DNA from: Amphiscolops sp. MND2022
Lineage: Eukaryota
Length of the DNA: 64,000 bases
Reading direction: 5' to 3'
Assembly: GCA_964187785.1 (NCBI GenBank)
Contig: OZ076419.1
Span: 9,486,001 to 9,550,000 of the forward strand
The notes under the pieces: generated by a model
The model's input: only the letters and a program-made list of their open reading frames with translations
What the model was told of the DNA's origin: nothing
The model's database searches: none
Position numbers and translations under genes: made by a program
In this document: positions 32,176 to 51,048 of the stretch, in pieces
Layout of the letters: each line of letters begins with the position of its first letter
Position numbering within the stretch: position 1 is the first letter of the stretch

Positions 32176-32235
32176 CTTACCAAATGCTTGTCAACAAATT
32201 AGATACATTTAGCGTTCAAGATACATACTTCATTA

Positions 32236-32420
32236 CAGTGCATAGACAAGCTTTTTCTGGCCTTTTTGCGGAAACCACGACAAGGATTTGCGGAATCCAT
32301 GACACGCTTACAGAATTCCAATCTCTTTGATGTTTGCGGAATCTAAGAAAAGCCCTTCCTTTGATGTTGCGGAAAGTAAGAAAATCTTACTTTCCGCAAA
32401 TTCAAATCTCGGATTCCACG
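32236..32420 (+). repeat. Left TIR and subterminal GYGGAA repeats
   Basis: TIR followed by ttgcggaaacc, ttgcggaatcc, ttgcggaatct, ttgcggaaagt, ctttccgcaa and gattccacgg. Confidence 0.85.
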
Positions 32421-33243
32421 GAAAAATTTAATGAGCCAATTAACCGTCTTGGACTCAATTATCTATCTTAGATTCGGCAATTGAAACTGGTCCTCAATTT
32501 AATCTCTTGGACTCCGCAAAAAATTCTAGTCTCCTCAAATTACACCCTAGCCTATTCTGAGAATCCTAGATCCCTGGATCTCCTTAAAAGACCTAAGATT
32601 GGTACCAAATAGTATTTTCGAGAGTTTTAATGTGATTATGTTGGTATTGAATTTCTTTTTTGAAGAACTTTTGAAATGATGGAAACCCTTGATTGGGACC
32701 AAATAGTTTTAGTGTGATTATGTTTGTATTGAAGTTCTTTTTATGAAGAACTTTTGAAATTATGGAAACCCTTGATTGGGACCAAATAGTTTTATACGGT
32801 ACATAAATGATTTAAAGGTTTTTTGGAATATTTTTGATTTTATGTAGATAGTATTTATCTGTAGATATCCACATAAATTTATCATTTTTGAATTAAATTG
32901 GATTTGAATTAAATTCATTAGTTACAACACATTTTGAGCAAAGAGTTGAAGAAAGTCCAAATTATCTTTATCGACACTGGATTAGGATTCCTTGTTTTTC
33001 TAATCAAAGAACCTATATTTTGTAACTTGTTCAACTCAAAATTGGTACCAAAATGTTTATTTTCCATTCTGAAACAATTCAGAAATTCCTTGATTCGGCC
33101 CCAAATGGAAATTCGAAACAACATTACAAAATAGTAATAAATCAAAAGTGTTTGAAAATGTTTTGAACAAAAGTTTGATGAAAAAGTCCTCAAAAGATGG
33201 AAAGTTTCATTCCGGAAAGTATTCTTGGCTGTATACTTGGTCG

Positions 33244-33870
33244 TCATTGCAAGTTTGTTCCTTCGCTGAACTCAGAGCGGGCAACCGGATCTTCATAATC
33301 AAACCTTAAATGCTCGAAGGGTTTGATTGGTTTGATAGCCCGGAGAACAACAACGCGTTGGTTTGGCTCTGCAAAAAGTTGAATGTCTGTCGACTTCATG
33401 TTCGCTTCAGCAACAGAGTGATTGGCCAGTCGACCCATGCATCTGTTCTCTGGGTGAACGGGGCACACTTCTGCAGTTGCATTTATGATTCTTCGGCCAG
33501 GGCCTTTAACTTCCAGGCAGTATTCGCGTTTGACGCCCTCGGTTGCCGAAACTTCTTCCATGGTCTTTTTGGTGAAAACTTGGCCATGGTAGTCGATGAC
33601 CACTTCATTTCTAATGAATTCGCGGGTGGCGACGAGTCCCCTGCCAAAATTCGCGAATACTGTTTGGGTGACTCCTGGCCAGCTTTGGGTTCTGGCTCTT
33701 TCAATGAGCAGGGATTGATCCTCATAGTCCATGTTCCCTGCCATTCCTTTAAAAATTATCTTCTGGATTCCACTGTTCTTCCTCTTAGGGGTACTTGTAA
33801 TCATAGCAAGAACTGGGAGATGAACTTTTTTGATGTCGAGGTTTGAATCATCAGTGGTCCACTTCTGGCG
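33244..33870 (-). CDS. SET-domain histone lysine methyltransferase, SETD8/PR-Set7-like (last exon, intact)
   Basis: Motifs FGRGLVATREF, VIDYHG, MGRLANHS and HLRFDY. Acceptor ttttttccag at 33871 in phase 0, matching the upstream donor CAA|GTACTA at 34197. Confidence 0.9.
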   Translation of the reverse strand, partial: RQKWTTDDSNLDIKKVHLPVLAMITSTPKRKNSGIQKIIFKGMAGNMDYEDQSLLIERARTQSWPGVTQTVFANFGRGLVATREFIRNEVVIDYHGQVFTKKTMEEVSATEGVKREYCLEVKGPGRRIINATAEVCPVHPENRCMGRLANHSVAEANMKSTDIQLFAEPNQRVVVLRAIKPIKPFEHLRFDYEDPVARSEFSEGTNLQ

Positions 33871-34197
33871 CTGGAAAAAACAGTTCGTATGATAATACAG
33901 AAAATAAGACCATATCTTTGAACACGTGTCGTTGAAACCAAATATAAATATTGAAACATTGCTAAATTCTACTCAAAAAGGTACTCCTAAATTTCGAAAA
34001 AAATATTCTAGATTTTTTTCGTTTGTTTTGACGAAGTTTATTCAAATATCAGAATCAAAAATCTAAATAGAAAATTCGAAGCATTTGATGTGAGCAGAAA
34101 CTTGAAAATGTAGTGCCCAAAATACAAAAATTTTCTCGGATAACACTTGATTGGAACCAGAATAGTAAAATCAGAATCGACATCTTTAAAATAGTAC

Positions 34198-35150
34198 TTG
34201 GAAAAATCCGTTCAGGCGTCCTTCCATTGTAGCGAGGTCTACCTTGCCATTGACGTGCTTGAAGAAAGCAGAAGCACGCGCTGCTTGGCGAGCATACCGC
34301 TGGCGGTCTTGGTGTTTCCTCACAGCCAACTTTACGGTTTCGAAGTCAAATGTGTTGTCGAGTATTGTGGAATACACCTCGTTTGCCTAGACTTTCAGCT
34401 TTGGCAGCACGATGTCTGGGTTATTCGCAATTGGCAACATGCTGTGAAGGTGGCGTTCCAAGTTCCATAAAGGACTACAAGTGTTTTTGAGTACCTGTTA
34501 TAATAAGTTGCGAAATACCGTGGAAATAAACGTTTTCAGTACCTGTTAAAATGAGTTATTAACATTGTTCGTTTGAACTGAATTGAAGCTTTTAAATTGG
34601 TTTTGATACATACCGAATCCATATATTGGTCGACAACATGGCTGGGCCTAAAATTTGACTTGCCATTAGAGTTGACAAAAAACACCTCTGTTTGAATGGC
34701 CCGGTCATCTGTCTCGCTGATTGATCGTTCGAATTTCGTGCTTTCACCTCCGCTCAGGAAATCACTCCGCACAGTGCTGTAATTCATCATCCCTTCTAGC
34801 AACCATCGTGGGACATTGTACGTGGTCTTCTGAGCACATCGCTCAGCAACATCAATTTCGAGGGCAAACTGGTCCATCGCTTCGTCCGATTCCTTCATTA
34901 AAATAACCGATTGGACAACTGCATGAACTGTGATCATGCTGAGCTCCCGGTCCAGCAACTCAAGGAAAATCAAAAGATATGCCAGGAGACTCCGAAAGAA
35001 ATCGATCTGAACTTTCTTTGTAGCCTCGATTTTCTTCCGGCATCTTCGCACATTGTCTTCTATTGTCCATTTCAGGTAGGACCCGACCGACTCGATTTTA
35101 TACTCCGGCTTCTTCTTCTTGCATGGGATGGCACTCTGTTGAACACATAC
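34198..35150 (-). pseudogene. Upstream exons of the SET gene; tyrosine-recombinase-like domain, degenerate
   Basis: ORF 34536-35051 contains LLAYLL...RELSMIT, CAQKTT, MNYSTVR, FFVNSNGK and SIQFKRTMLIT, reminiscent of Crypton-like YR folds. Donor AACAG|GTACTG at ~34541. The next exon has an in-frame TAG at ~34387, and no catalytic Tyr was identified. Confidence 0.4.
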
Positions 35151-35619
35151 TGTTTAGAATACAGATAATTCGTTTGAATGTTTTTTCAAGGATTATTGTG
35201 GATTGTCTTGGTTTCCACGAAATGAATATGAACTTTGAATTTCTGTGAAAACAAATGCGGAAAACAAGACCATATCTATATACACATGTCGTGGAAACCA
35301 AATACATATGATAAAACATTGCTGTATTCCACTCGAAGGGGAATACATTATCTTGTACTCATACTTTTTGTTTTTTTTTTAAACAGAATTTCTCATTTAA
35401 TTTCATGCAATTTGATCAAAGATCAAGATCAAAACGTTAAGTAGAAAATACTGAGTCATCAGATGTGAGAAGAAGCTAGAAAATGAGTCTCAAAGAAAAC
35501 GAAATTTTTCTCCCATTACCCTTGATTGGAACAAAAATTATAAAATTCCTTGAAACCCTTGATTGGAACAAGAATTATGAAATCCTATGAAACCCTTGAT
35601 TTTAACAAGAGTTATAAAA

Positions 35620-36177
35620 TCAAAGCCGACATTTCCTTTTCACACACAAAAGTAATACCTTTTCACACACAGGCATTTCACGTGGACGTTTCAGTTGATC
35701 AGGGCTCGCAGGCTGGTGGGCAGGAAACGGTGTGTTGATTGGCCTTGTTGGCGGTGAGTTTAGTATGAGTTCCTGACTCCCACTCGATGCACACTCGGTC
35801 ATGATGCCATCCTCGTTAATTGAAAACATGACCGTTGATTGTGCCGATTCAAAACACGGAGAGGGGGTAAGTTGGTTCGGGGACTTGGTCGGAGTTCCAG
35901 GCTGTGCCAACGTGTTTTCGAACAATCCAGTTGGGGTTTGCATTTGGCTGAACGAAGTAGGGGTCAAATTAGTCAATTCCCGAAAAGGTGTGCTATGCAT
36001 ATGAGAAATTGGTAATGGTTGCAAAGTTTGAAAAGTCTTATTTGGATCCATTTCAAGTGAAGTTGTATGCAGATGAGAGACTTGACTTCCAGAAAAATTT
36101 GAAATAATGATTTTACAAATCAAGTTATTTCTCAATTGAATTGGCACGTGTTGACACCCTGCTGATCCGGATGTCAA
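35620..36177 (-). CDS. S/T/P-rich low-complexity ORF, probable 5' exon of the YR-SET gene
   Basis: 185-aa ORF on the same strand, ending near a donor AAG|GTATTA at ~35655. The exon phase was not reconciled with the next exon. Confidence 0.4.
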   Translation of the reverse strand: MTSGSAGCQHVPIQLRNNLICKIIISNFSGSQVSHLHTTSLEMDPNKTFQTLQPLPISHMHSTPFRELTNLTPTSFSQMQTPTGLFENTLAQPGTPTKSPNQLTPSPCFESAQSTVMFSINEDGIMTECASSGSQELILNSPPTRPINTPFPAHQPASPDQLKRPREMPVCEKVLLLCVKRKCRL

Positions 36178-36528
36178 TCATAATTAAAGAAGAATTGACA
36201 CCTTCAATTATCCATAGGTATTTTCGAGTACTTAATTCACTTAATTAGAATTAGCTGTTCTATAATACCTCTTGGTATTCGCGGTTTCGTCAATCATAGT
36301 TGATGAAATGACACCTTCAATTATTCATAGGTATTATCGAATACTCATTTCACTCAATTAGAACCTAAGACGCAATTAAGAGGTGCAATTACCATTTTCT
36401 GGTGAAAATTGCAATTAGTAAGGTGTAATTATTGGTGACTGACATCAGGTATAGACATCAGGTATAGACAATCGAACATTTGTATCATCGTTTCACCCGG
36501 GTAAAACTATCATCCTTAATCATCAAAA

Positions 36529-37825
36529 ATGCTTCTTCAAATTTTTTCCGAGAATGAAATTGTCCAGATTTTGGATCCTGCTACCTTCAATTTGGGAGTC
36601 AGCAAAGATCATTGCATTTATCAATGATTGGTGTGTCAGAATCAAATGGGTTGACTGGTCGTCCAAGAAGAAGGAAGACATTGCTGTTCCCGAAAAAGAT
36701 CGATCAGAAAGAAATTGTTGGAATATCAGGAAATCGCAGCGACTTGTTCTCGAGACAACGCAAAGGAGACGATCTACGCCACTTGTCTTCAACGCTTGCA
36801 GACTGGTCAGAAGCGATCAGGTCTACTTTTGGCAACCAGAGTGTGATTGCGTGGATACTGATAGATGCCGTGATGATCGTTGCTGTGGCTCAGTTGTGAT
36901 GGGCAGTGTAAAAATAAATGATCCTTTCATTAATCAGTGCCTAGTAACAGACGTGGAAGGCAATGATGTGTTTGTATCATATCGCCAACTACGAAACAAA
37001 CCTTGTTCCAGAGAGACTAATCCTGATAATGAAAATGATGAAGATGGAGATTCAGAGTCTGAATCTGCCCGCCCACCAATTCGGAAACAAGCTCGTGTGA
37101 CTTTCGCCCCTCAGCCCCAGCCACAAATGGAAATCATCTCTTTACTCTCAAGTGTTGATGATGACGTTGACTTGACTTACGTTCCATGTGCCAATGATAT
37201 AATTAAGGTTGGATCCATTGCAGCATATGCCGACGACGATTTTGAGATCAAGCGACTTTTTTATGACCACCAAAGGAAAAAAGCATTTGCATCCATGCAG
37301 AGTAGAATCGATCCCGACATTGAAGTGCGAATACCGTCAAATCGAATCGTCAGCAAATCATCCTCCAAAGGCGAAGTGATGGACTTCAATTCCATAACTG
37401 AGCCAATTGACCAAGCGTTTGCTTTGTTTTTGGCTATAAAGCGAATTGTGGGTCTCTCTAAAAATAAACATTCGATTACTGCAACATTGGTTCCCTGCAC
37501 CCCATTGACAAAGAAATTATGTGGCTTCGAAACCAACAATTGCAAAGAAGCTGTTAAATACAGTGTCACGAACAAAGAGGGAATGAGATGGTGTAACGGT
37601 ACGTGGGACAATGTACTGGGTAGAATGTGGGATTTGATCCCATGTTATTCAAGTGATGGAGAAGACGTCCTCATCAAGACAATGAGATTCACCGAAAATC
37701 GTGAATTCGGGATGTTCACAATTCGTGTCCAGATCTTAACAACACAAGGTCACTACAAAACGAGCTGCCTATATAAAGAACTCTCTCAGAATGTTCCTTC
37801 ATCAACCTCAAATGCGACACTTTGA
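36529..37825 (+). CDS. Protein with an N-terminal Tudor/chromo-barrel-like domain and further beta-barrel-like segments (one frameshift near 36585)
   Basis: 423-aa ORF 36554-37825. Removing one T at ~36586 joins it to ATG 36529, giving FSENEIVQILDPATSIWESAKIIAFINDWCVRIKWVDW, a Tudor-knot-like pattern. Confidence 0.5.
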
Positions 37826-39054
37826 AAATGAAAGAATGAGATGTTCAAAAACACTTTGAAAACTTTTCGATATACTTTCTGTGTCACTTTTGATAATTTA
37901 TGATCGTAAATTATGAGAATATTTTGTTGATGAGAAAATATTTTTTTCAACCTCAATTGGAACCAAAATGAAATCTCGGTTTCTACGAAATTATAGTTTG
38001 TCTTGGTTTCCACGAAATGCATTGTAAAAATTCAATTGCTCTGAGAACGAATGCGGAAAACAAGACCATATTTTTAAACACATGTCGTGGAAACCGAATA
38101 CCTATCTTAAAACATTGTTGAATTTCACTCAAAGGGGTATACTCATGATTTTTCAGAAAAAAACCATGTGTTTGTTTTCACTTATTTCGATCAAGGTAAT
38201 CAACTGTTATTCACATGTCAATATAAAAAGGTATGAAACAGTTCTGAGTCCTGCTATGTTGGAAAAAATCTTTGGAAAGAAGTTTTGAAATGGACTCTTT
38301 TTCACCTCTTTATATACAAAACATCACTTTTTCGTCCTCAAAACGACTAGAAAACATCTGTTAAGAAAGATGGTTTCATAAAACATTCAAAAAATGGCTT
38401 TTTGCCCATTCAAAGTATAAAATTGGTTTCTCTATTGTAGACTGAAATGTACTTCTTGAACAGTCAGAACGACCCATAATTGGAACCAAAATTTCAATGA
38501 ATCAGAGTCGAGTTGAAAACCTTCCATGCGACCAGAGACTCCGAAAGAGAAATAATTTTCATTGGAAAAACAATTATTCATGATGGGATCACTTAAAATG
38601 TGGATATTAGGAAACCTATCAGATTGTCCTGGTTTCCACGGAATTCATCGTGAAATTTCAATTGCTCTGAGAACGAATGCGGAAAATAGGACCATATCTT
38701 TATACACATGTCGTGGAAACCAAATACATATCTTAAAACCTTGCGGAATTTCACCCAAAGGGGTGTACTCATGAATTATTTTAAAAAACCCTTGATTTTT
38801 TTCACTTATTTCAATCAAGATCAAATGTCATTCGAAAATCATTGTAAAAAGGTAAAAGCAATTCTGAGTCCTTATATGTGAGAAAAAAGCTTGGAAATTA
38901 GGTCCTAAAATTGGACTCATTTTCAACTCACGATTTGACACTCAATTAAATTATGACTTATTGCCTCAAATCATGGACTCAAAATACAGACTCAAATAAA
39001 TGATAAGCAGCCACACCAAAGTTTTACATTCTAATTTAATTTCACTATCTAGAC

Positions 39055-42000
39055 ATGACTCCACTGTCTATCTGGGAAAAAAACCTTATCCAAGTAAAAA
39101 ATGGAAAATTTTTTATCAACAGCAGAATCTTCGATGAGATATCCGGAAAAGAAATACCAAACAAGTTCAGGCGATTTGAAACCCTTGTTGCAGAAATGTT
39201 TAATGGGCAAAATATAAATCCAAACGAGTTTATCCGGAAGATTCCAGTAAAAGGCCATAAATCGGCACCTATATTCCTTGCCGCAAAAGTTGCGATGTTG
39301 CTTGTACTCCGTGGATTTAAAGACTTCCCTTGGAATTCATGCAGAGAACAGTTTGTTGGGTTCTTTTTCAATAAAGATGTTATACCGTACGTGAATCCCT
39401 ACATGACAAATGTTGTTGCGAAAGATGTAAACCCCGAAATAGTCAACCCCACGAAAAGTATCAGCCTCGCGAACGAAGTCAACCCGACTAAAGATATCAT
39501 CACAGAGAAAGATGTCAACCCCGGAAGAGTCAACACCACGAAAGAAATCGGGCTTGCAAAACATTCAGGCAATGAATGGGTTACCTTCGAAACGCCTCCA
39601 AATAATCATTTAAGCGAATCGAACTTAGAAGCCACAGAGACAAAAAAACGAAAGCTGAACGAGACGATCTTTTTAACACAACTCTAATGTCAGATGATGG
39701 CTTCATCCGGTTCATGAAGCACATCAAACAATCAGCAAAAAGTGTGGAAAGTCTGTTGGAAACGAGAGGGTCCACTGAAGACTTCAGACATCAGTTATCC
39801 CTTGTGATGAAAACGGGGAACACTGAAGACGTAATCAACGTTATCCGCAGGAGACTATCCATCGTTGGACTTGGATACAATTTAGTCCCATGCATTCGAT
39901 TAGTCAAGAAGTCAACAGCTGAAATTCAGTTTTATTTCACAGCAATGTGTGAACCAGAAAGGACATTCTCTGGTTTTCGCTGCAACCTCATAAAATGCGT
40001 CGAAATAGCTTCGTATTTTTTGTTCGGGTCCAATGAATTCAGAGACTTACGGGTCGATATATGGGGTGACGGGTGTGAAATTGGTGGCGTGGAAACCACT
40101 CGAATTGCATTCCGGATCCTAACAGACAAAATGAAGTGTCAATCTTCAAATGCTGTATTCTGTTTCGCTGCATACAGGGGTAAAGATAGCAGATTTGCGA
40201 TGGAACAGAATCTCGGACCGACTCTGGCAGGTGTTCAAGAATCAGGCTGGCTCTTCAACAAGACCATGGAGTTATCTAATCGAGGGGTAAAATTGACGTA
40301 TAGCGGTGATTCCCCGTTTTTGATCAGATTGATTCTTGGGATAACAAACGAAACATCGAGTCCATCTAGAATGCCACTCCATGTAACGGACCCTCAATAC
40401 ACACCAATAACATGTGACCCAAAGACTGGTCTACGATCTGACGTGGCCATACCATTCAGAACGGACCTCCCGAAATTGTCCTTGGTCTACTTCGAGAATG
40501 TACAGTCAGTTTGCCCCGATGTCACTCACATGACTACAAGATGTGTTGAAAATGATCTCCAAAGAATAGCACAAAAAATTATTAGAGAAAAGTATCCACA
40601 TCATGATCTGGCAATTCGACAACTTGAAGAAAACTTAACAAGGAGAGACGCAAAAAGACCATATTTTCAATTCAACGTTACCCACAAAAGTGGTTCTTTG
40701 ATTGGCACTGTGGGTCCAGTATCGCTTGCTGGTAGTAATGCCCTAGCGGTGATTGCAGATAAAGAAGAACTTTTGGACGCGAAAGAAGGAAGTATCGGCG
40801 ACCTTTTCGAAGGTGTTTGGGATGTAGCGGATATAGTTCTCGGAAGTGAAGAAAGTGCACACGTCCAATGCGCGAAAGTCCTCAGAAACTGGTACCCCAA
40901 CCTTTTCGACAAAGACAACTCTAAAGAAATCGGGTCAGGTGACAAGTTTATTTCGGCGTATGATGCATGCGAACTCTTAAGACACAGCTTGAATTAATGT
41001 GTTTTATGTCTAAGATCTGAAGAATTCAACTGTGACACATTCAAGAAATGAGCTGAAACATATTACCAAACAAATGTATTGATTTTCGGACATGCAGGTT
41101 TGACACCGTACAAACTAAAAATGATGATGTTTCCTCAGTTAGTTGAGAGTGGATTCATACAACGGCCATTCGACCATTTGTGTGAAGGTCTTGAAAAATC
41201 GAATCATCATGCTAATCGTGACTTCCAAACAAAAACGATGCGTGGCGGAGGGAAAATTTATCATAAGGATCCACTCTTTCTCGAATCCTCGTCTTCGTTC
41301 ATGAAATTCCTAAGAATGGCAACTGAATTGAAGGAGAGAGAAACGAACCCTGCCAGTGGTACCCTGGAGAAAACAACAGTGACAGTTTCGAAAACTAACC
41401 CAATCAGTGTGATGAGTTTGCTTCAAAGTGCAGCAACGGCTATGAAGATTCAGGTCCCGCGTCCAGAGTACCTCGAAATTTGCCGTAAAGAAATAACGAT
41501 TCCGAAACTTGCAATTGGGGCCAAGGAAAATGTTTTAGCTGGGTTGAGGTTTTGCCTACTTGGTCGCCTGGGTACTTGGAAAAGACAAACCCTAACACAT
41601 GACAATGTAAAACAGATGGTAGAGAATATGGGAGGAATCGTTTTTGATAATGATCGAGCTGGGGTGCTGATGAACACCCATTCACATTTACCTAATTGTT
41701 TTGTTATTGTCAAGGACGAAAAAGACTTGATTATAGGCACCGGGTCCACCGATGAAATAAAAGATTTGAAACTGAAATCGAGACGAAGAAGTTCTTCATC
41801 AACAAGAGATGGTGAAAATGAACCCTCACAACACTCTAACGTTGCGAAACGATTTGCAGCGGGGGGTTTCAAGTTCATAAAGGCTGATTTTTTGGCAAAA
41901 AATCATGAAAAAAAATATTTTGATTGACCCAGAGACATACATTATTCACCCCGGATCTAAACTGGTTGAAAACCGTGTGAACGATAAAAGACCGCTGCTT

Positions 42001-42099: not shown

Positions 42100-42302
42100 A
42101 ATCTTTTTGTGTGGTTTAGTTCAAGTGCTATTCTGAGCAATTTAGCGTGAACAGTTTTGAGAATTGAATTCACATTGATAAATATTAGTTTTTGGAAAAT
42201 CGCAGTCCCAAGTCATGATGGGATCACATAATGTGCCACATGAAAAATCATGAGCCTGAAAGAAACTGAAAAAACCTCACAGAAATTGTGCCTGAAAATC
42301 AA

Positions 42303-42631: not shown

Positions 42632-43383
42632 ATGATTTTTTTTAAAACAAACCCTTCCATTTTTTTCACCTATTTCAATCAAGGTAGTCAAATGTCATTC
42701 ACATATCAATATAAAAAATTTAAAAAAGAATTCTGAGTCGTTATATGTGAGAAAAAAGCTTTGGAATCAGGTCCTGAAAATGGGACTCGTTTTCACCTCT
42801 TTTCATACAAAAAAATCGGTTTTTTTCGTCTTTGAAATGACTAGAAAACATGTTTCTTTACTTTAATGTAAAAACAGGCAAAAAAAACATTTCCATGCAT
42901 GCTTTTGGTCCTGGAGAATTGTTCAAAACAAGCTGAAAAAATTTTCGAGAGTAAATCTAAATATAAAGCTAAATCTAAATCTACATCTAAATCAATCTAC
43001 ATCTAAAATATCGTTTTCAAGAGAAATGGATTTAATCCCACAGGTGGTTAAGATGAGCATATTCCTTTTTGGGTACAAAGTGGGGTCAACGAGTTCAGCT
43101 GGCACTAAAATGTTTTGCGTCGAGTGCATCATTGCGGGCTTGCTCTCTTCTTCGAGTAGGCTTTCAGTTGTTATTTTTGTCTCGTAGCATCTCGTGTATG
43201 GATGTGTGATCTGGCTGTATGGAGGAGCTATTTCCATCGACTTTTGAGGATCCGTTGATTTGGCCCTGTACTTTTTGAGGTGGGTTACAGCTAGTTTTTG
43301 TATGGTCACCGAAGGTCGTTCCGAAGCTAACACGATTTCGAGGCGCTTGTTCAAAAATTCTGGGAACACCTGTGAACACCTGT

Positions 43384-44790
43384 GTTCTTTGATTGGCACT
43401 GTGGGTCCAGTATCGCTTGCTGGTAGTAATGCCCTAGCGGTGATTGCAGATAAAGAAGAACTTTTGGACGCGAAAGAAGGAAGTATCGGCGACCTTTTCG
43501 AAGGTGTTTGGGATGTAGCGGATATAGTTCTCGGAAGTGAAGAAAGTGCACACGTCCAATGCGCGAAAGTCCTCAGAAACTGGTACCCCAACCTTTTCGA
43601 CAAAGACAACTCTAAAGAAATCGGGTCAGGTGACAAGTTTATTTCGGCGTATGATGCATGCGAACTCTTAAGACACAGCTTGAATTAATGTGTTTTATGT
43701 CTAAGATCTGAAGAATTCAACTGTGACACATTCAAGAAATGAGCTGAAACATATTACCAAACAAATGTATTGATTTTCGGACATGCAGGTTTGACACCGT
43801 ACAAACTAAAAATGATGATGTTTCCTCAGTTAGTTGAGAGTGGATTCATACAACGGCCATTCGACCATTTGTGTGAAGGTCTTGAAAAATCGAATCATCA
43901 TGCTAATCGTGACTTCCAAACAAAAACGATGCGTGGCGGAGGGAAAATTTATCATAAGGATCCACTCTTTCTCGAATCCTCGTCTTCGTTCATGAAATTC
44001 CTAGGAATGGCAACTGAATTGAAGGAGAGAGAAACGAACCCTGCCAGTGGTACCCTGGAGAAAACAACAGTGACAGTTTCGAAAACTAACCCAATCAGTG
44101 TGATGAGTTTGCTTCAAAGTGCAGCAACGGCTATGAAGATTCAGGTCCCGCGTCCAGAGTACCTCGAAATTTGCCGTAAAGAAATAACGATTCCGAAACT
44201 TGCAATTGGGGCCAAGGAAAATGTTTTAGCTGGGTTGAGGTTTTGCCTACTTGGTCGCCTGGGTACTTGGAAAAGACAAACCCTAACACATGACAATGTA
44301 AAACAGATGGTAGAGAATATGGGAGGAATCGTTTTTGATAATGATCGAGCTGGGGTGCTGATGAACACCCATTCACATTTACCTAATTGTTTTGTTATTG
44401 TCAAGGACGAAAAAGACTTGATTATAGGCACCGGGTCCACCGATGAAATAAAAGATTTGAAACTGAAATCGAGACGAAGAAGTTCTTCATCAACAAGAGA
44501 TGGTGAAAATGAACCCTCACAACACTCTAACGTTGCGAAACGATTTGCAGCGGGGGGTTTCAAGTTCATAAAGGCTGATTTTTTGGCAAAAAATCATGAA
44601 AAAAAATATTTTGATTGACCCAGAGACATACATTATTCACCCCGGATCTAAACTGGTTGAAAACCGTGTGAACGATAAAAGACCGCTGCTTCTCGACCAA
44701 TGTAGTGGAAAAACTTCAGTTGAAAATGTATCTGCTATTGTTGCTCTCAAGAGATATCGTGATGTAAAATTCAAACAATCATTTTTTTGA
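43384..44790 (+). pseudogene. Duplicated 3' part of the transposase (catalytic-Glu region and BRCT)
   Basis: Copy of 40693-42099 carrying the same two stops and the same A-run frameshift. Confidence 0.85.
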
Positions 44791-45682
44791 AATCTTTTTG
44801 TGTGGTTTAGTTCAAGTGCTATTCTGAGCAATTTAGCGTGAACAGTTTTGAGAATTGAATTCACATTGATAAATATTAGTTTTTGGAAAATCGCAGTCCC
44901 AAGTCATGATGGGATCACATAATGTGCCACATGAAAAATCATGAGCCTGAAAGAAACTGAAAAAACCTCACAGAAATTGTGCCTGAAAATCAAGAGTATA
45001 CCCCTTTGAGTGAATATCCGCAATGTTTTAAGATATGTATTTGGTTTCCACGACGAGTGTTTAAAGATATGGTCTTGTTTTCCGCATTCGTTCTCAGAGC
45101 AATTGAATTTTCACAATGCATTTCGTGGAAACCAGTACTATCTGACGGGTGTCCCAATTTTCAGACACTTATCAGATTGTCCTGGTTTCCACGAAAATCA
45201 TTGTGAAGTTTCAATTGCTCTGAGAACGAATGCGGAAAACAAGACCATATCTTTAAACACACGTCGTGGAAACCAAATACATATCTTAAACATTGCGGAA
45301 TTTCACTCAAAGGGGTATACTCATGATTTTTTTCAAAACAAACCCTTCCATTTTTTTCACCTATTTCAATCAAGGTAGTCAAATGTCATTCACATATCAA
45401 TATAAAAAATTTAAAAAAGAATTCTGAGTCGTTATATGTGAGAAAAAAGCTTTGGAATCAGGTCCTGAAAATGGGACTCGTTTTCACCTCTTTTCATACA
45501 AAAAAATCGGTTTTTTTCGTCTTTGAAATGACTAGAAAACATGTTTCTTTACTTTAATGTAAAAACAGGCAAAAAAAACATTTCCATGCATGCTTTTGGT
45601 CCTGGAGAATTGTTCAAAACAAGCTGAAAAAATTTTCGAGAGTAAATCTAAATATAAAGCTAAATCTAAATCTACATCTAAA

Positions 45683-46060
45683 TCAATCTACATCTAAAAT
45701 ATCGTTTTCAAGAGAAATGGATTTAATCCCACAGGTGGTTAAGATGAGCATATTCCTTTTTGGGTACAAAGTGGGGTCAACGAGTTCAGCTGGCACTAAA
45801 ATGTTTTGCGTCGAGTGCATCATTGCGGGCTTGCTCTCTTCTTCGAGTAGGCTTTCAGTTGTTATTTTTGTCTCGTAGCATCTCGTGTATGGATGTGTGA
45901 TCTGGCTGTATGGAGGAGCTATTTCCATCGACTTTTGAGGATCCGTTGATTTGGCCCTGTACTTTTTGAGGTGGGTTACAGCTAGTTTTTGTATGGTCAC
46001 CGAAGGTCGTTCCGAAGCTAACACGATTTCGAGGCGCTTGTTCAAAAATTCTGGGAACAC
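45683..46060 (-). CDS. Possible terminal exon of the JmjC gene (copy at 42992-43369)
   Basis: 125-codon open frame preceded by acceptor ttgttcacag at 46061. The link to the JmjC exons is not phase-confirmed. Confidence 0.35.
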   Translation of the reverse strand: MFPEFLNKRLEIVLASERPSVTIQKLAVTHLKKYRAKSTDPQKSMEIAPPYSQITHPYTRCYETKITTESLLEEESKPAMMHSTQNILVPAELVDPTLYPKRNMLILTTCGIKSISLENDILDVD

Positions 46061-46115
46061 CTGTGAACAATGAAGTGTTGGTCACCATGAATATACAACA
46101 TTCAAATCAAACGGT

Positions 46116-46320
46116 GCGAAATGAGCCAGCCCATGGTTGGAACTAAAATTACTGAAACACGTTCCCTTTGATTTTAATCCTAGACTTAACCCGCAATTGG
46201 AACCTAAATCCCAAAATCGTGAAATGAGCCAGCCCATGGTTGGAATCAAAATTACTGAATCACGTTCCCTTTATTTTTAATCCTAGACTTAACCCACAAT
46301 TGGAACCTAAATCGCAAAAT
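46116..46320. repeat. ~102-bp tandem duplication in the putative last JmjC intron
   Basis: gaaatgagccagcccatggttggaa...ttggaacctaaatc occurs twice. Similar local duplications lie at 32625-32790, 36195-36365 and 48590-48840. Confidence 0.85.
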
Positions 46321-46453
46321 TTTTTCCAAACTAACATAATGTTTAAAAACAGAATCTTACTTGGAGGACTTCATTATGGTTGTATATCTGTCGCACAGTG
46401 TTGTACGCGGATACAAGGCGTCGGCAGAGGCGGGGGTGGAGATCCACAACAAG

Positions 46454-48540
46454 TTAGTGCATCATGAGAACTAACATCTCTGGAAGGCCCGGGAACTTGT
46501 CATTGGCGTTTTTTGCGTACTCCAGGATCATTGACTCTTTTATCATTGGCAAGTGACCCATTGCCAAGAAATTTGTACCCAATGATACTGCGTCACCTTT
46601 CGTCAAGACAAAATGGAGATAGTTGGCTGGCATGACCAAAATATCTCCAGGTGGCATGACCAAAAAGTGAATACCAGGTTTTTTGATTGAATATTCCTAC
46701 AATCACTATATTCGGACAACAGAGACTGTTAACCCAGCATTAATTTTTTCTCCTATTTTTTACGAGTAACTATTTTCCCTTTTGTTCAAAAATGTTTCAG
46801 ATCATCATAACATTTGATGTATTTTGTTTGAAATGCTGAAAATTGATATGAAAGACACTGTTTTATTGAAGTTACTGTTTTCAGAATTTTGACTGAAATT
46901 ATTATGCTTACATCATGACACTCTCGAGGTTGGACCATTTTTCGAAGATAGTGGGGTTCTTCTTGATGGGTTTGACGAGAAAGAAAATCTTCTCTCCAGC
47001 GAGTACCGTATAGAAGACCGAAGTTGCCGAATAGTCCTGATGCCAAGTGGTATGAGCAGAATCCTGAGTCACCAGGGTATAATAAGACTTTGAACAGGAG
47101 TAGGGCTCACTAATTGGCTGATGTATGAGTTCGTCTGTGAGGTGGTTGATGGAATTTTGCGATATCATGTCTGGCACAGTGAAGATGGATTTGGGCCGGG
47201 TCCGAATGTCAATGACGTTCAGCGGGTGGAACTGACTGTCTGGGACGCAGGTGTCCAACTCTGCGAAAAAGGCCTCGTAATCCATCTCCCGTGTCTGCAA
47301 ACAAAATAAATTAGTTATCAACACTCCCAATCAATGATTGTTTCAGTGAAAATGCTTACTAGACCCTTAATGCTTACTATATCCTTAATGCTTAATATAT
47401 TAGTACATCTAGATTTCTTCCATTTTCCTTTGGCTGCTTCGACATTTCAGAAGGAATTTGTCTTTTCATGATTCCAAATTTTCCAAAAAATGTTTCTAGA
47501 ACTGAATATATTAGTGACTATGCAAAGGAATTACTTTGGTGATTGGTGAAACATTTCGAATCGACGTGATCAAAACCGTATGATTGGTGAAAAGGATGTT
47601 TACATATGTTTGATAATTACCTCGCCCAATTTCGCTGACTTGACTTCAATCGTCTCATTCGGTTCCACAAGGTTGCGAGGCTTGAGGATACGTTTCACCT
47701 CCGTAGTGAAACCTCTGTCCAAGTTCATCTTCGGAACTTTCAGTCCGTCACAATGTTCGGCACCGCCCTTCCAAAGTAAGGGTACCCCATGGCGGAGAAG
47801 GTAACCAAGATGCTCGGTCTGGTTCAAATGGGGACCTTGCCATTGAGCATACGTGAAGCCACACTGCAGGGGGACGTTTTCGCAAAACGTGAAGTATGAA
47901 CGGGTACCGAAAGGGGCCGGGGGGTTCCGGAACTGAATGTCAACTCAGTTGGCATAGGCGTCAGGGCAGTTTTGCAGGCTGACGATCTCGCAACATGGTT
48001 TCTTAGGCTGTACCCATATCCGAATCCTTTGCCGCATGCTTTGCACAAATGTAGGCTCCTCTGTTTTCCTTTAGCTGCTTCTGCAACAAAAGGAATTTTC
48101 AAAAAATGAGAAATTTTAAAAATCCCTGCGAAAACGTCTCAACCCCAATTTTAACCAAAATTATCCCGAATGCCTACTGAATTTGTACATCTTTTTTCTT
48201 TTGTTTTCTTTTGGCTGCTTCAGCAGTTCAAAACAAAAAGCCTAAAAAAAATCGAGAAAAAATACATGCGAAAACGTCTCGCAACCCTTAATTGGAACCA
48301 GAAAATATGCTTACGATATTGGTACATCTGGACTGTTTCTACCGCGGCAATTTTTCTTTGTTGTTTTTCGCAGTATTTAGCCCTTCTTTTGTGACGCTCC
48401 TTGCTTTTTTTCGTTGTGAAAATTTGGCCACATTTCTCGCAGGTCTTCTGCGTGTCACGTTGTTGTCGACTCAGGCCATCGCACGACTGGAGGTTACGCG
48501 TTAGGTGCCAATGTCTTACTCGCACGGCATATTTGGACAT
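46454..48540 (-). pseudogene. Spliced zinc-finger + JmjC histone demethylase, KDM2/KDM7(PHF8)-like (2 apparent frameshifts)
   Basis: Exons 48540-48315, 48080-47621, 47294-46912 and 46696-46454 with GT-AG introns; the first two introns are phase-consistent. Zinc fingers CEKC..H..C and CKAC..H..C. JmjC motifs LNVIDI, HTTWHQD (HxD), GEKIFFL (K), PANYLHFV (H), TNFL and KFP. Frameshifts at ~47920 (G run) and ~46680 (T run). Confidence 0.85.
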
Positions 48541-50679
48541 GGGAACCCTGAGAACAAAACAAATCAAGGACGGTTCATTTTTGAAATAGAAAATGTTTGA
48601 GAATGCATCAGAAATTTATGTTGAACTCCTCGATGATGAAAATTCTTTGATGGTTAAAATCAATTTAGGATAATCAAAATCAAGAAATTGATTACTATTA
48701 AAATGAAAAAAAATCCAGGACAGTTTATTTTTCAAAACAGAAAAATGTTTGAGAATGGGTCAGAAATTTTTGTAAAACTCTGATGAAAATTCTTAGATCA
48801 ATAAAATCAATTTATGGTAATCAAATTAAAAAAATTGAACAATTGGATTGCTTACGTTTTTTCGCTGTTTCACAGTCAGATGCTGCAGGTACAGTGCATC
48901 GTGATGAACTGGGTTGAGGTTGAGAGCTTTTCTCCATTGTAGACTGAAATATAAATTTTGAACACTCAGAACAACCCATAAATGACCCAAGTATCTATTT
49001 AATGAATTAGAGTCGAGTTAAAAGTCTCACAAGCGACCAGAGTCTCCGAAAAATAATTTTATTGGAAAAACAAGTTTTCATGATAGGATCACTGAAAATG
49101 TGGCAACTAGGACACTTATCAGATTGTCCTGGTTTCCACGGAATTCATCGTTAAAATCGAATTGCTCTGAGAACGAATGCGGAAAATAGGACCATATCTT
49201 TATACACATGTCGTGGAAACCAAATACATATCTTAAAACATTGCGGAATTTCACTCAAAGGGGTATACCCAGGTTTTTTTTCAGAAAAAAGCCATGGTTT
49301 GTTTAAACTTCAAGATGCTGTTTTTGCAATTAAATATAATAATAAAAACACTTGAATACAAACCAGAATCCTTCAATTTTAAATGTATTTCCAGAGTGAC
49401 AGTTCTTAATTGAGATACAAACTTTGTTCACACTATTTTAAAAAACGACTCTTTTCCCTCCCCTCTCCACGCACTTTTTAAAGAAGAGTTTTCACAAAAA
49501 ATCTTCAAAAATGGCTTTACCTCCATTTGTTTTAAAATAGGGCCATAAATTATTTATATTTCATCGCAAAAATGAAACTTATTTATTCTCAGACAGAGGT
49601 CACGGATGTAACTTATATAACGTACTTCAAATCTTTCAATATACTTTTGGTGCCAATTGAAATGGAAAACAAACAAAGCCCGTGATCAAAGATTCTATTT
49701 GTTAGAAAAGGAGAAAAACCCCCGCAAATTTTTCTGAGAAAGTAGTAGATCTATTAACTTTTATTATTATTATTCTTATTCTTATTATTGAAATGAAACT
49801 AAGTTTGTGAATGTTTGATTCTTACTGCAGACCTACGAGAGTCTTAAACTGAAAGCCCATTTGATATGAAAGCCCAACCAAATTAATTATTGGAACCAAA
49901 TTTTTCAAGATTGACCCGTTCTTGGAACAAAAAGTTAAAAAAACGACCCACTATTGGAACCAAATTTTTGAAGAAGGACTCGTGATTGGACTCATTTTTT
50001 TAAAATAACAACCCACGATTGGAACCAAATTTTTGAAAAAAGTTGAAGATTTTAATGAAGCAACTTAGTTCTGAACACAACTTACCGCTGAAAGTTTGAA
50101 GGTTTGAATGACAATTCCTCTGCCCAGGTTTGCTTGATTTGTAAGCTTGATACGCGACGCTGAATTTCTTGATACGCGCCGCTGAATAGCCAATAGGAAT
50201 CAACCGTTATTTGAATTTCTTGCTTTTTACATGTACTCGTATCATGCATGATACGCGACGCTGATCTTTTATCTTCTGAACATATATAAAATGAAATGAA
50301 TTTATAAATGTTTTATATAAAAATTAAAATATAAATTATATAAATATATCAATATATAAATATATATAAAACAAATATATAAATGACCCAAAATTGGAAC
50401 CAAATTTAAATAATTTCAAAAGTCTAAGTATTGAATACCCCCCACATACAAACAAATTATATACACATACACCCACATATACAATTATTCGATCTCAACT
50501 TTATTCTGTAATTTGTGAAATGAATACATTTGTGAAGAAAAATCCTATGGTAAAAACTCAACAATACTGATTATATTTGAAATTTTGTTTTCCAAGAAAT
50601 TTCGATTTTATGGGAAACCGTGTTTGCAAACGTTCATTTAGCAAACAATTATTGCGTCCATACTGTCAGTTAGGTAAAT

Positions 50680-51048
50680 TAGTTTGATTCAGAGATAAAA
50701 GGAAAATAGCCGACACTTCTACGGATTCTGAGATCAAGTTGAGGATTAAGTTTTTGTGGATTCTAGGACACCAAAATTTCAAGCAATTTGATTGGTTCAC
50801 AAAATTGTTGTGGAATCCGGGACCATGAAATGCGGAAAGTAAGACAAAAAGTTGCCGACAGCTCTGCGGCACAGCTAATGTTTTAAGTATTTGTTATTGG
50901 ATTCCACAGAATTGCGTTGACGCTGTCTCGGTTTCCACAAAACTAGTGGAAAGTAATCAATTTTGCACGTTTAAAAACATGTCTGTGGAATCTAAGGGGT
51001 TACACGCTCAGAAATGTGTTTGTAGAAATTTAGCTTGTCTATGCACTG
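50680..51048 (-). repeat. Right subterminal GYGGAA repeats and right TIR
   Basis: ttgtggaatcc, tgcggaaagtaag, gattccacag, gtttccacaa, gtggaaagt and ctgtggaatct, followed by AGCTTGTCTATGCACTG. Confidence 0.85.

What the first reader, a model, noticed from the sequence alone, without database searches (positions are those of the whole stretch)
32236..51048. Giant 18.8-kb TIR transposon carrying a histone writer/reader/eraser gene set
Seen in sequence: matching 17-bp TIRs, a 2-bp duplication, subterminal repeats, and private internal repeats that bound one 18.8-kb unit. It holds four genes in two tail-to-tail or divergent blocks: SET (minus), Tudor-like (plus), transposase-BRCT (plus) and ZnF-JmjC (minus). 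Established knowledge: SET domains methylate histone lysines, JmjC domains demethylate them, and Tudor domains read methyl-lysine. Inference: this is a cargo-carrying DNA transposon that encodes its own chromatin-control machinery, for example to counter silencing. I do not know of a described family with this exact combination. This copy is decayed, with lesions in most genes.
Basis: partly seen in the sequence, partly recalled or inferred. Interest (0 to 1): 0.93.

Follow-up and report, generated by a model that had tools for sequence, protein, structure and literature searches.

The report
Giant transposon carrying histone-modifying genes
This is a broken 18.8-kb copy of a many-copy jumping gene whose cutting enzyme resembles RAG1 in predicted fold and has travelled for a long time with its own histone methyltransferase, histone demethylase and a probable methyl-mark reader; I found no published description of this gene set.

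Summary
The element is window 32231-51053. It has perfect 22-nt terminal inverted repeats (5'-CATTACAGTG...) and a 2-bp target duplication, TT.

Three other copies on other DNA (two complete, one cut at its left end; 93-98% identical) and one diverged full element in another sample share these ends and sit in different flanks. It is therefore a real mobile family.

The gene set is as described:
- a SET gene (KMT5A/SETD8-like, with a tyrosine-recombinase-like front part);
- a gene with three small beta-barrel modules (Tudor/Agenet/KOW class);
- a DDE transposase with a BRCT tail;
- a zinc-finger JmjC gene (PHF8/KDM7-like).

The same partners stay linked to the transposase in lineages only 32-54% identical, in shuffled order. 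They are under strong purifying selection (omega 0.06-0.10).

By fold, the transposase is nearest to RAG1/ProtoRAG/Transib. No sequence-level link was found. The 2-bp duplication and the CA..TG ends fit the wider CACTA-Mirage-Chapaev-Transib (CMCT) clade, not canonical Transib.

A 9-mer, GYGGAAWCC, marks both ends and every internal repeat unit.

The window copy is decayed: a frameshift and two stops in the transposase, a 2.7-kb tandem duplication, and broken Tudor-like and JmjC genes.

What the kit does is inferred, not shown. This scan found the same family earlier on other DNA of this genome.

The parts
32229..32230 (.). Left copy of the 2-bp target-site duplication (TT)
   Evidence: It lies directly outside the 22-nt repeat and matches 51054-51055. 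Other copies show TT/TT and TC/TC.
32231..32252 (+). Left terminal inverted repeat, 22 nt, 5'-CATTACAGTGCATAGACAAGCT
   Evidence: 100% complementary to 51032-51053 (I23). The same terminus is found in L001, L005 and, diverged, in L007/L008.
32253..32420 (.). Left subterminal repeats carrying GYGGAAWCC motifs
   Evidence: Motif hits at 32267, 32289, 32335 and 32411.
33247..36177 (-). SET gene in four exon blocks: 35611-36177 low-complexity front part; 34599-35138 tyrosine-recombinase-like part; 34198-34470; 33253-33879 SET domain. No lesion seen.
   Evidence: Pfam SET E 1.6e-9. Nearest solved relatives are KMT5A/SETD8. Blocks were mapped with the L007 proteins. Splice signals flank the intron at 33880-34197, and L007 is continuous there. 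The features of the middle block match only tyrosine-recombinase-fold families. The GxG, NHS and FDY motifs are readable in the translation.
36554..37825 (+). Tudor-like gene: three small beta-barrel modules plus a conserved C-terminal domain. The first ~20 residues are out of frame in this copy.
   Evidence: 96% identical to P0081. The N-terminus differs from L001 and L007 by a frame change near 36587. AF2 gives three all-beta modules. Foldseek hits are Spt5 KOW, FMRP/ADCP1 Agenet, UHRF1 and SETDB1 Tudor. All named Atlas neighbours belong to the Tudor clan, but scores are low.
39055..41927 (+). Transposase-BRCT gene, broken. N-terminal domain 39055-39561. Frameshift at the A7 run 39642-39648. 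In-frame stops at 40995-40997 and 41049-41051. The DDE core spans 39687 to about 41330. BRCT at 41523-41717.
   Evidence: A single 826-aa ORF in L007 and 717 aa in L001. D110/D114, D194 and E486/E489 are unchanged in every aligned homologue that covers them, apart from one Arg at D194. The fold is nearest RAG1/BbRAGL/HzTransib. BRCT: Pfam hits and a fold match to BARD1/BRCA1 BRCT.
40694..46069 (+). Tandem duplication of 2685 bp (40694-43378 = 43385-46069). It repeats the transposase 3' half, one repeat unit and the last JmjC exon.
   Evidence: 99.93% identity, 2 mismatches. Absent from L001, L004 and L005.
45686..48615 (-). ZnF-JmjC gene, broken. C2H2 fingers at 48223-48615. Linker block 47612-48138 with a frameshift at about 47920-47983. 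JmjC first half 46920-47306 (HxD). JmjC second half 46355-46648 (His), with its 5' part missing. Last exon 45803-46078.
   Evidence: PDB sequence hits to PHF8, KDM7 and KDM2A (E 1.1e-12 and 1.2e-4). C2H2 hits. Exon map and frame change.
33894..49289 (.). Seven family-private ~170-bp repeat units: 33894-33983, 35201-35346, 37991-38153, 38606-38786, 42295-42650, 44986-45341 and 49110-49289. Six of the seven hold an inverted pair of GTGGAAACC 82 bp apart; the partial unit at 33894-33983 has no exact 9-mer.
   Evidence: None occurs outside the element in the window. Units are also present in L001, L002, L004, L005, L006 and L007.
35518..50400 (+). Second private motif, ACCC-N3-ATTGGAAC, at 9 sites, all on the + strand (arrays at 35518-35628, 46118-46320 and 49889-50037)
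   Evidence: 9 hits, all inside the element, against 0 expected. Tandem arrays.
50720..51031 (.). Right subterminal repeats carrying GYGGAAWCC motifs
   Evidence: Hits at 50809, 50900, 50931 and 50984.
51032..51053 (-). Right terminal inverted repeat, 22 nt
   Evidence: I23.
51054..51055 (.). Right copy of the 2-bp target-site duplication (TT)

Best explanation
Shown: window 32231-51053 is a decayed copy of a multi-copy cut-and-paste DNA transposon family. The family has 22-nt inverted ends (5'-CATTAC...GTAATG-3'), a 2-bp target duplication and four long-linked genes.

Shown or strongly indicated: the transposase is a DDE enzyme with a long insertion domain. Its predicted fold is nearest RAG1/ProtoRAG/Transib. 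Its end features place it in the wider CACTA-Mirage-Chapaev-Transib (CMCT) clade as a lineage that no Pfam model recognises. It ends in a single BRCT domain.

Inferred mechanism:
1. The transposase, through its N-terminal domain, or another element-encoded DNA binder (the C2H2 fingers of the JmjC protein, or the tyrosine-recombinase-like part of the SET protein), recognises the 9-mer GYGGAAWCC. This motif is arrayed under both ends and in every internal repeat unit.
2. The ends are cut and moved. The BRCT tail brings in double-strand-break repair factors.
3. The KMT5A-like methyltransferase, the PHF8/KDM7-like demethylase and the three-barrel reader-like protein are drawn to the element's own motif-bearing non-coding units. 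There they set the methylation state of its nucleosomes and keep the element transcribed and mobile, that is, counter-silencing. This would work like the sequence-specific VANDAL anti-silencing protein or Spm TnpA, but with enzymes the element carries itself.

The confidence given is for the whole statement, including the inferred function. The anatomy and the family claim alone I put at about 0.9.
For: Ends and mobility:
- 22-nt perfect inverted repeat.
- Other copies share these ends and sit in unrelated flanks with 2-bp duplications: L001 and L005 complete, L004 truncated at its left end.
- L001 and L005 are 98.4% identical, so movement was fairly recent.
- A full 13.1-kb relative sits in another sample.

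Family size: 80 close homologues, and 485 clusters at 50% identity.

Linked genes:
- Same order in L002 and L007.
- Same partners in shuffled order in L003, L006 and L010, with identities falling in step with the transposase.
- Omega is 0.06 for SET and 0.10 for the transposase. JmjC has dN 0.18 with dS saturated.

Transposase fold:
- The Foldseek top 46 PDB hits are RAG1/Transib (E 1.7e-5).
- The top 8 Swiss-Prot models are RAG1.
- In an independent wide search, the only 6 of 48,161 chains with Z>=8 are RAG1, BbRAGL and HzTransib.
- The acidic residues are unchanged in every aligned homologue that covers them, apart from one Arg at D194. They sit on beta-1, after beta-4 and in a later segment.

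BRCT.

Enzymes: SET; JmjC.

Motif: 24 of 26 GYGGAAWCC hits lie inside the element, against 1.4 expected.

Precedents for transposon-encoded epigenetic factors, and for CA..TG ends with 2-5 bp duplications: PMC12730594.
Against:
- The link to RAG1 is by predicted fold only. The model has pLDDT 61 and pTM 0.47, TM-scores are about 0.2, and rmsd is 16-17 A.
- No Pfam or PDB sequence hit appeared even with a widened profile.
- No CACTA, Mirage or Chapaev transposase has a solved structure in the hit lists, so RAG1 may simply be the nearest solved representative.
- The Tudor-like model is poor (pLDDT 47.6), and KOW domains score as well as Tudor.
- A KMT5A-like writer together with a PHF8-like eraser could just as well impose silencing or a targeting mark as remove silencing.
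- Which protein binds the 9-mer is a guess.
- L007 shows TT/TA rather than a perfect duplication.
- Repbase and Dfam could not be searched.
Confidence: 0.55

Rival explanations
1. The chromatin kit serves target choice rather than counter-silencing. The reader-like protein, with marks written or erased by the SET and JmjC enzymes, tethers the transposase to a particular chromatin state. RAG2's PHD finger couples RAG1 to H3K4me3 in this way, and chromodomain integrases steer retrotransposons.
For: - The Tudor-like gene lies next to the transposase gene in most lineages examined, and it is the partner found in all of them.
- The transposase fold is nearest RAG1, whose partner reads a histone mark (the RAG2 PHD role is established knowledge).
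- The BRCT and barrel modules are both protein- or mark-binding modules.
Against: - Only three independent insertion sites with intact flanks were seen, so no target preference could be assessed.
- This reading does not explain why the 9-mer is arrayed in the element's own internal non-coding units.
- An element has no obvious need to carry both a writer and an eraser only to read a mark.
Confidence: 0.2
2. The element is a composite. The tyrosine-recombinase-SET gene and the JmjC gene belong to a separate Crypton-like mobile element that became fused with a CMCT-clade transposon. The kit works for that other element, or for neither.
For: - The middle exon of the SET gene has features of tyrosine-recombinase-fold families only: Phage_integrase, DUF3504, Integrase_2, NDC10_II and ResT-TelK.
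- Earlier notes of this scan report elements in this genome with a recombinase, SET and JmjC but no DDE transposase (I did not test this).
Against: - SET and JmjC sit at opposite ends of the unit, not as one inserted block.
- Both are linked to the transposase, and have diverged in step with it, across lineages.
- No Pfam recombinase hit appeared, and the catalytic residues could not be confirmed.
- The whole unit is bounded by one pair of ends and one duplication.
Confidence: 0.1
3. The accessory genes are passengers: captured host genes that hitch-hike and do nothing for the element.
For: DNA transposons often pick up host gene fragments. The SET and JmjC domains are ordinary host-type families.
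Against: - Omega is 0.06-0.10 across subfamilies whose synonymous sites are saturated.
- The same four partners are kept through rearrangement in lineages down to 32% transposase identity.
- Catalytic motifs are retained even in the decayed window copy.
Confidence: 0.05
4. It is not a transposon: a host gene cluster that happens to lie between two short inverted repeats, or between two small Tc1-like elements.
For: The ends contain TA followed by CAGTG, which resembles Tc1-type termini (my own recollection of Tc1/Tc3 ends). No empty site was recovered.
Against: - Homology between copies stops exactly at the 22-nt repeats, and the flanks outside are unrelated.
- The TA lies inside the conserved terminus.
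- Duplications are TT, TT and TC.
- There is no Tc1/mariner transposase.
- A 22-nt perfect inverted pair in 64 kb is expected about once in 10,000 windows (my arithmetic).
Confidence: 0.02

Closest known systems
Transib transposons and the RAG1/ProtoRAG (RAGL) transposase
   Same: The predicted transposase core gives RAG1, amphioxus BbRAGL and HzTransib as the best, and the only strong, solved-structure matches. It is a DDE enzyme with a long insertion domain between the second Asp and the Glu. The Glu motif reads EGxExxN, which I recall from memory is also the RAG1 pattern. A partner gene with a histone-mark-reading type of fold lies next to the transposase, loosely like RAG2 with its PHD finger.
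   Different: The target duplication is 2 bp, not 5 bp. The ends start CATTAC, not CAC. No sequence-level similarity to RAG1 or Transib models was found. There is no RAG2-like kelch/PHD gene. The BRCT tail and the SET and JmjC genes have no counterpart.
[quoted passage not shown]
   Same: 5'-CA..TG-3' termini and 2-5 bp duplications. PlavakaB has 5'-CATCA..TGATG-3' ends with 2-3 bp duplications, close to the CATTA..TAATG with 2 bp seen here. Members such as ESTA were also recognised through similarity to RAG1. Chapaev transposases (Pfam DUF1280) group with RAG1 (PMC3985635), and language-model and shape neighbours of this transposase include DUF1280-bearing clusters. Subterminal binding-site arrays are as in En/Spm (my own knowledge).
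   Different: No Pfam hit to DUF1280, DUF1258 or Transposase_21. The clade's C(2)C and H(3-4)H motifs are not evident as such. Instead the conserved pattern is C-x4-H-x4-C (C262, H267, C272) plus C424. The host appears to be an animal, and the cargo is different.
Fungal DNA transposons encoding TET/JBP dioxygenases (Kyakuja-Dileera-Zisupton, Plavaka and others; PMC12730594)
   Same: Cut-and-paste transposons that stably carry an enzyme acting on an epigenetic mark, presumably for their own benefit.
   Different: There the cargo is a single DNA-base-modifying gene, gained repeatedly and passively by many transposon lineages. Here three histone-directed genes have been co-inherited with one transposase lineage.
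HarbingerS and Phytophthora MuDR families encoding a SET methyltransferase (Repbase Reports 2014, cited in PMC12730594)
   Same: [quoted passage not shown]
   Different: Different transposase superfamilies. No JmjC, reader-like or BRCT component is reported there. I could not read the Repbase Reports themselves.
VANDAL (MuDR) anti-silencing protein, and Spm/En TnpA
   Same: An element-encoded factor that acts in a sequence-specific way on motifs repeated in the element's own non-coding DNA to change its epigenetic state. VANDAL is cited in PMC12730594; TnpA is from my own knowledge. The GYGGAAWCC arrays in the ends and internal units fit such a design.
   Different: Those proteins have no catalytic histone-modifying domains. 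Binding of any protein to the motif is untested here.

Membership tests
Transib superfamily | 5-bp target-site duplication | tested here: not met
   2 bp in the three copies with intact ends (TT, TT, TC), and TT/TA in L007.
Transib superfamily | Termini beginning 5'-CAC (heptamer-like CACAATG/CACAGTG) | tested here: not met
   The terminus is CATTACAGTG. A heptamer-like TACAGTG sits 3 nt inside it.
Transib superfamily | Transposase with sequence similarity to the RAG1 core | tested here: not met
   No Pfam RAG1 model and no PDB sequence hit, even with profiles A1 and A4.
Transib superfamily | RAG1-core-like fold (RNase H domain with a long insertion domain) | tested here: met
   Foldseek and two VIA-align runs put only RAG1, BbRAGL and HzTransib at the top (Z 8-9.6; the next unrelated chain scores 6.5). 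About 300-350 residues align. The model is of moderate confidence only.
CMCT clade (PMC12730594) | 5'-CA..TG-3' termini | tested here: met
   5'-CATTAC ... GTAATG-3'.
CMCT clade (PMC12730594) | 2-5 bp target-site duplication | tested here: met
   2 bp.
CMCT clade (PMC12730594) | [quoted passage not shown] | tested here: inconclusive
   The conserved pattern is C262-x4-H267-x4-C272 plus C424. A C-x2-C at 424-427 is present in this subfamily but not conserved. No residue-level alignment to clade members was possible.
Chapaev (Pfam DUF1280) | Match to PF06918 | tested here: not met
   No hit at E<=10 in 24 family members. Only neighbouring clusters in the Atlas carry DUF1280.
Tc1/mariner | TA target duplication and a Tc1/mariner DDE/D transposase | tested here: not met
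   The TA is inside the conserved terminus, and the duplications are TT or TC. No such transposase was found.
SET-domain lysine methyltransferase (KMT5A/SETD8-like) | SET domain above the Pfam threshold with the GxG, NHS and (F/Y)DY motifs | tested here: met
   PF00856 scores 38.6 bits against a cut-off of 22.4 for the window ORF. KMT5A chains are the best PDB matches. The motifs FGRGLVA, ANHS and RFDY are readable. Substrate was not tested.
JmjC demethylase (PHF8/KDM7/KDM2 group) | JmjC fold with HxD...H iron ligands and 2-oxoglutarate-binding residues | tested here: met
   The exons hit PHF8, KDM7 and KDM2A at E 1.1e-12 and 1.2e-4. WHQD, FY...GEK and YLHF are present in the window copy. The Pfam score is below cut-off because the domain is split over exons. 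In this copy the gene is broken elsewhere.
Tudor 'royal family' methyl-lysine readers | SH3-like barrel with an aromatic cage that binds methyl-lysine or methyl-arginine | tested here: inconclusive
   Three all-beta modules in a low-confidence model. Fold hits include Agenet and Tudor but also KOW domains. No Pfam hit. Conserved Trp residues are visible in module 1. The cage and binding were not tested.
BRCT domain | BRCT fold or Pfam match | tested here: met
   PF16589 scores 29.8 bits against a cut-off of 27.3 in homologue P0060. Sub-threshold hits occur in the window copy and in distant relatives. The fold match to BARD1/BRCA1 BRCT has Z 4.3-4.6 and rmsd 2.1-2.4 A over 54 residues.
Tyrosine recombinase (Crypton / DUF3504-like) | Catalytic R-H-R-Y tetrad in a phage-integrase-type catalytic domain | tested here: inconclusive
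   Language-model features match only recombinase-fold families, and the best cluster's neighbours are SET-containing proteins and phage integrases. There is no Pfam or PDB sequence hit, and I could not identify a clear HxxR.

The most novel reading that the evidence does not exclude
The element is a self-contained write-read-erase chromatin circuit attached to a RAG1-type transposase. The three-barrel protein would be a RAG2-like accessory subunit that couples cutting to a histone mark. The SET and JmjC enzymes, recruited through the GTGGAAACC units, would set that mark (for example H4K20me1 or H3K9me) on the element's own nucleosomes. The transposon would then license its own transcription and excision. 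This would be an independent, older or parallel solution to the chromatin coupling seen in V(D)J recombination.
Probability: 0.15. Interest if true: 0.9.

Novelty: new variant of a known kind. Interest (0 to 1): 0.68.

Why it matters
Transposons are usually seen as targets of histone-based silencing. A family that has kept its own methyltransferase, demethylase and reader-like protein under selection through deep divergence would be a clear animal case of a mobile element bringing chromatin enzymes to the conflict with its host.

It would also widen the known diversity around the transposase lineage that gave rise to RAG1, in three respects: a different target duplication, a repair-factor-binding tail, and a different chromatin-linked partner.

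The GTGGAAACC arrays give a concrete, testable handle on how such enzymes could be aimed at the element itself.

For this particular window the news is modest. It is a decayed copy of a family that this scan has already flagged elsewhere in the same genome.

Tried and rejected
- Tc1/mariner reading (TA + CAGTG ends). Rejected: the TA is inside the conserved terminus, and the duplications are TT or TC.
- Canonical Transib membership. Rejected on duplication length, terminus and lack of sequence similarity.
- Sequence-level link to any solved structure, using two profiles: none found.
- Pfam on 24 family members and 8 long distant relatives: only BRCT.
- Restoring an ORF across the empty site to find what the element landed in: nothing convincing.
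- Source or organism names from cluster look-up: none given.
- Similarity of the L010 SET protein's front part, or of its neighbouring ORFs, to the recombinase-like exon or to JmjC: none.
- One long relative (P0096) could not be fetched as DNA.
- The internal repeats as ordinary foreign MITEs. Rejected: in the 64-kb window and the ten fetched loci they occur only in this family, and they carry the family's terminal 9-mer.

Full report
OBSERVATION

The repeat finder gives a perfect 22-nt inverted repeat, CATTACAGTGCATAGACAAGCT, at 32231-32252 and 51032-51053 (sequence read).

A homology search with the largest ORF found a large protein family. Its contigs hold further copies:
- L001:175-17870 and L005:2002-19635 align with the window from 32228/32231 to 51054/51055 at about 93%. 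They are 98.4% identical to each other.
- Homology stops at the 22-nt repeats, and the flanks are unrelated.

The 2 bp directly outside the repeat are TT/TT in the window, TT/TT in L001 and TC/TC in L005. A diverged full element from another sample (L007:142-13252, 13.1 kb) has the same kind of ends (CATTACTGTGCATCTCCAAGCT) with TT/TA outside. L004 is a fourth copy that has lost its left end.

The element is therefore 32231-51053, with 22-nt repeats and a 2-bp, non-TA duplication.

REPEATS INSIDE THE ELEMENT

Subterminal repeats are confirmed. For TGYGGAAWC, 7 of 10 window hits lie close to the two ends, against 2.8 expected.

The 'private internal repeats' are a ~170-bp unit, often in palindromic pairs. 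It sits at seven non-coding places in the element and nowhere else in the window. It also occurs in every related locus that holds several genes of the set.

These units carry the same 9-mer as the ends. GYGGAAWCC has 26 hits in the window, 24 of them inside the element, against 1.4 expected. Each unit with exact hits (six of the seven) holds an inverted pair of GTGGAAACC 82 bp apart; the partial unit at 33894-33983 has none.

A second motif, ACCC-N3-ATTGGAAC, has 9 hits. All are inside the element and on one strand, against 0 expected.

The compact L007 element has only two units, one on each side of the transposase gene. In the window's subfamily the units have spread into other intergenic spaces and into an intron.

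THE GENES

SET gene.
- The ORF at 33244-33804 (-) passes the Pfam threshold (E 1.6e-9).
- Its best solved relatives are KMT5A/SETD8.
- The GxG, NHS and FDY motifs can be read in the translation.
- Mapping the uninterrupted L007 proteins onto the window gives four exon blocks for this gene.
- The intron at 33880-34197 has canonical splice signals and contains a repeat unit. L007 is continuous at that point.
- The middle block has no Pfam or PDB hit.
- Its language-model features match only families of the tyrosine-recombinase fold: Phage_integrase, DUF3504, Integrase_2, NDC10_II and ResT-TelK.
- Its best cluster has SET proteins and phage integrases as shape neighbours.
- This is a lead, not a demonstration.

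JmjC gene.
- The exons hit PHF8, KDM7 and KDM2A (E 1.1e-12 and 1.2e-4).
- They keep the HxD...H and Tyr/Lys positions.
- C2H2 fingers lie upstream in the same gene.

'Tudor-like' gene (36554-37825).
- It has 15 homologues and no Pfam hit.
- Its alignment shows three similar modules plus a conserved C-terminal domain.
- AlphaFold gives three all-beta modules but low confidence (pLDDT 47.6).
- Foldseek returns Spt5 KOW repeats, FMRP and ADCP1 Agenet, UHRF1 and SETDB1 Tudor domains.
- I accept 'small beta-barrel of the Tudor/Agenet/KOW class'. 'Methyl-lysine reader' remains a hypothesis.

THE TRANSPOSASE

- It is a single ORF of 717 aa in L001 and 826 aa in L007.
- Pfam recognises only a C-terminal BRCT. 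It is above threshold in P0060, and sub-threshold in the window copy and in distant relatives.
- A profile search of 1.84 billion representatives finds 485 clusters (170 at E<=1e-30). The family is therefore large and old.

Fold evidence. The AlphaFold model (pLDDT 61, pTM 0.47) has an RNase H-type core.
- The Foldseek top 46 PDB hits are RAG1 or HzTransib, followed by Hermes.
- The top eight Swiss-Prot models are RAG1, aligned to its catalytic core, residues about 558-1030.
- VIA-align on Foldseek's list gives Z 7.2-9.6 for 35 RAG1/BbRAGL/Transib entries, then a drop to 5.8.
- An independent scan of 48,161 chains finds only six with Z>=8. All six are RAG1, BbRAGL or HzTransib.

Catalytic residues. 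D110/D114, D194 and E486/E489 are unchanged in every aligned homologue that covers them, apart from one Arg at D194.

Limits of this evidence:
- There is no sequence-level link to RAG1/Transib, even with a widened profile.
- TM-scores are low.
- The PDB hit lists show no CACTA, Mirage or Chapaev transposase, so RAG1 may only be the nearest solved representative.

Placement from the literature:
- PlavakaB has CATCA..TGATG ends and 2-3 bp duplications.
- Majorek et al. (PMC3985635) equate Pfam DUF1280 with Chapaev transposases and group it with RAG1.
- DUF1280-bearing clusters are among the language-model and shape neighbours of this transposase.

My placement is a lineage not recognised by any Pfam model, inside the CMCT clade on its Chapaev/Transib/RAG1 side. 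It is not a canonical Transib.

IS THE GENE SET INTEGRAL TO THE ELEMENT?

Yes.
- L002 (70-78% nucleotide identity) and L007 have the same four genes in the same order and orientation.
- In more distant lineages the partners remain, in a different order:
  - L006 has Tudor(-), recombinase-like-SET(+), transposase(+).
  - L003 has transposase(+), JmjC(+), Tudor(-).
  - L010 has SET(-), transposase(+), and a Tudor-like gene recognised by profile comparison (probability 94.8%, E 5.5e-8).
- Identities to L007 fall in step. For the transposase, SET and Tudor genes they are about 76/72/77% in the window subfamily, about 54/49-57/46-67% in L006, and 32/31/26% in L010.
- Between L001 and L002, omega is 0.06 for SET and 0.10 for the transposase. 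The JmjC exon has dN 0.18 with saturated dS.

This is what long co-inheritance under selection looks like. Repeated capture or passive hitch-hiking would not give this pattern.

STATE OF THE WINDOW COPY

Transposase gene:
- An A7 run at 39642-39648 shifts the frame between the N-terminal domain and the core. A8 would be in frame. L004 also has A7, while L001 and L005 have A9, so both sublineages slipped from an in-frame ancestor.
- There are two in-frame stops, at 40995 and 41049.
- A 2685-bp tandem duplication (99.93% identity) repeats its 3' half together with the last JmjC exon.

Other genes:
- The Tudor-like gene has lost its first ~20 codons to a frame change.
- The JmjC gene has a frameshift in the linker block and lacks the start of its second catalytic exon.
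- The SET gene shows no lesion.

L002 has an independent tandem duplication of the whole transposase gene (99% identity).

HOW IT PROBABLY WORKS

Shown: a cut-and-paste element with defined ends, a 2-bp duplication, a DDE transposase, and three chromatin-type genes kept by selection.

Inferred:
- An element-encoded DNA binder recognises the GYGGAAWCC arrays at the ends, for synapsis and cutting.
- It may also recognise the arrays in the internal units.
- The BRCT tail recruits break-repair factors. This fits an enzyme that leaves double-strand breaks.
- The KMT5A-like writer, the PHF8/KDM7-like eraser and the barrel protein act on the element's own nucleosomes.

I favour counter-silencing directed at the motif-bearing units. 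The analogy is the sequence-specific VANDAL factor (cited in PMC12730594) and Spm TnpA (my own knowledge).

The main rival is chromatin-guided target choice, as with RAG2's PHD finger. The two cannot be told apart with the data available here.

NOVELTY

Six full-text searches found no description of this combination.

Related things are known:
- SET genes in HarbingerS and Phytophthora MuDR.
- TET/JBP genes in many fungal transposons.
- Anti-silencing proteins in VANDAL.

I therefore rate it a new variant of a known kind. Repbase and Dfam could not be searched, so prior cataloguing cannot be excluded.

Earlier notes of this scan report the same family on other DNA of this genome and reach the same reading. 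I re-tested the transposase fold, the linkage and the selection independently.

This report adds:
- the corrected ends and duplication;
- the placement in the CMCT clade;
- the shared 9-mer of the ends and internal units;
- the lesion map of this copy.

Noticed in passing
window 33880-34197; L007:764-1729: The intron between the two SET-gene exons contains one of the ~170-bp private repeat units. The compact relative L007 has one continuous ORF there. A unit insertion may have created this intron, or it may have landed in an existing one.
   Followed up: partly
window 39642-39648; L001 ~7925; L004 ~9741; L005 ~9859: The homopolymer that joins the transposase N-terminal domain to the core is A7 in two copies and A9 in two others. 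Only A8 keeps the frame. This could be independent slippage mutations, homopolymer assembly errors, or a site where transcriptional slippage restores the frame.
   Followed up: partly
window 40694-46069; L002:6125-12009: Two independent, very recent tandem duplications involve the transposase gene: 2685 bp at 99.93% identity in the window, and about 2854 bp at 99% protein identity in L002. This may be a recurrent rearrangement or an assembly artefact.
   Followed up: partly
window 35518-50400: The motif ACCC-N3-ATTGGAAC (it contains a reversed CCAAT box) occurs 9 times, only inside the element. It is always on the + strand, whatever the orientation of the neighbouring gene.
   Followed up: partly
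window 30661-31066: Two exact TGYGGAAAC motifs lie 1.2-1.6 kb left of the element. They could be a remnant of another copy or a related short element.
   Followed up: no
L006:14076-21818 and 17529-17550: In a diverged relative, a matching right terminal repeat lies between ORFs of a Gypsy-like retroelement. This points to nested insertions of the two element types.
   Followed up: no
L007, L008, L009: An identical 424-aa Tudor-like protein (P0082) is encoded in three independent public samples (an ENA assembly, a Logan run and a JGI metagenome). The host of the compact subfamily therefore turns up in environmental data sets.
   Followed up: no
window 59671-63945 (-): A Gypsy-like pol (RT, RNase H, integrase) lies next to an ORF with a dUTPase domain.
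   Followed up: partly
window 4000-20000: A long stretch has strong G-over-C skew (up to 0.49) and shifting AT skew. No large tandem array explains it.
   Followed up: no
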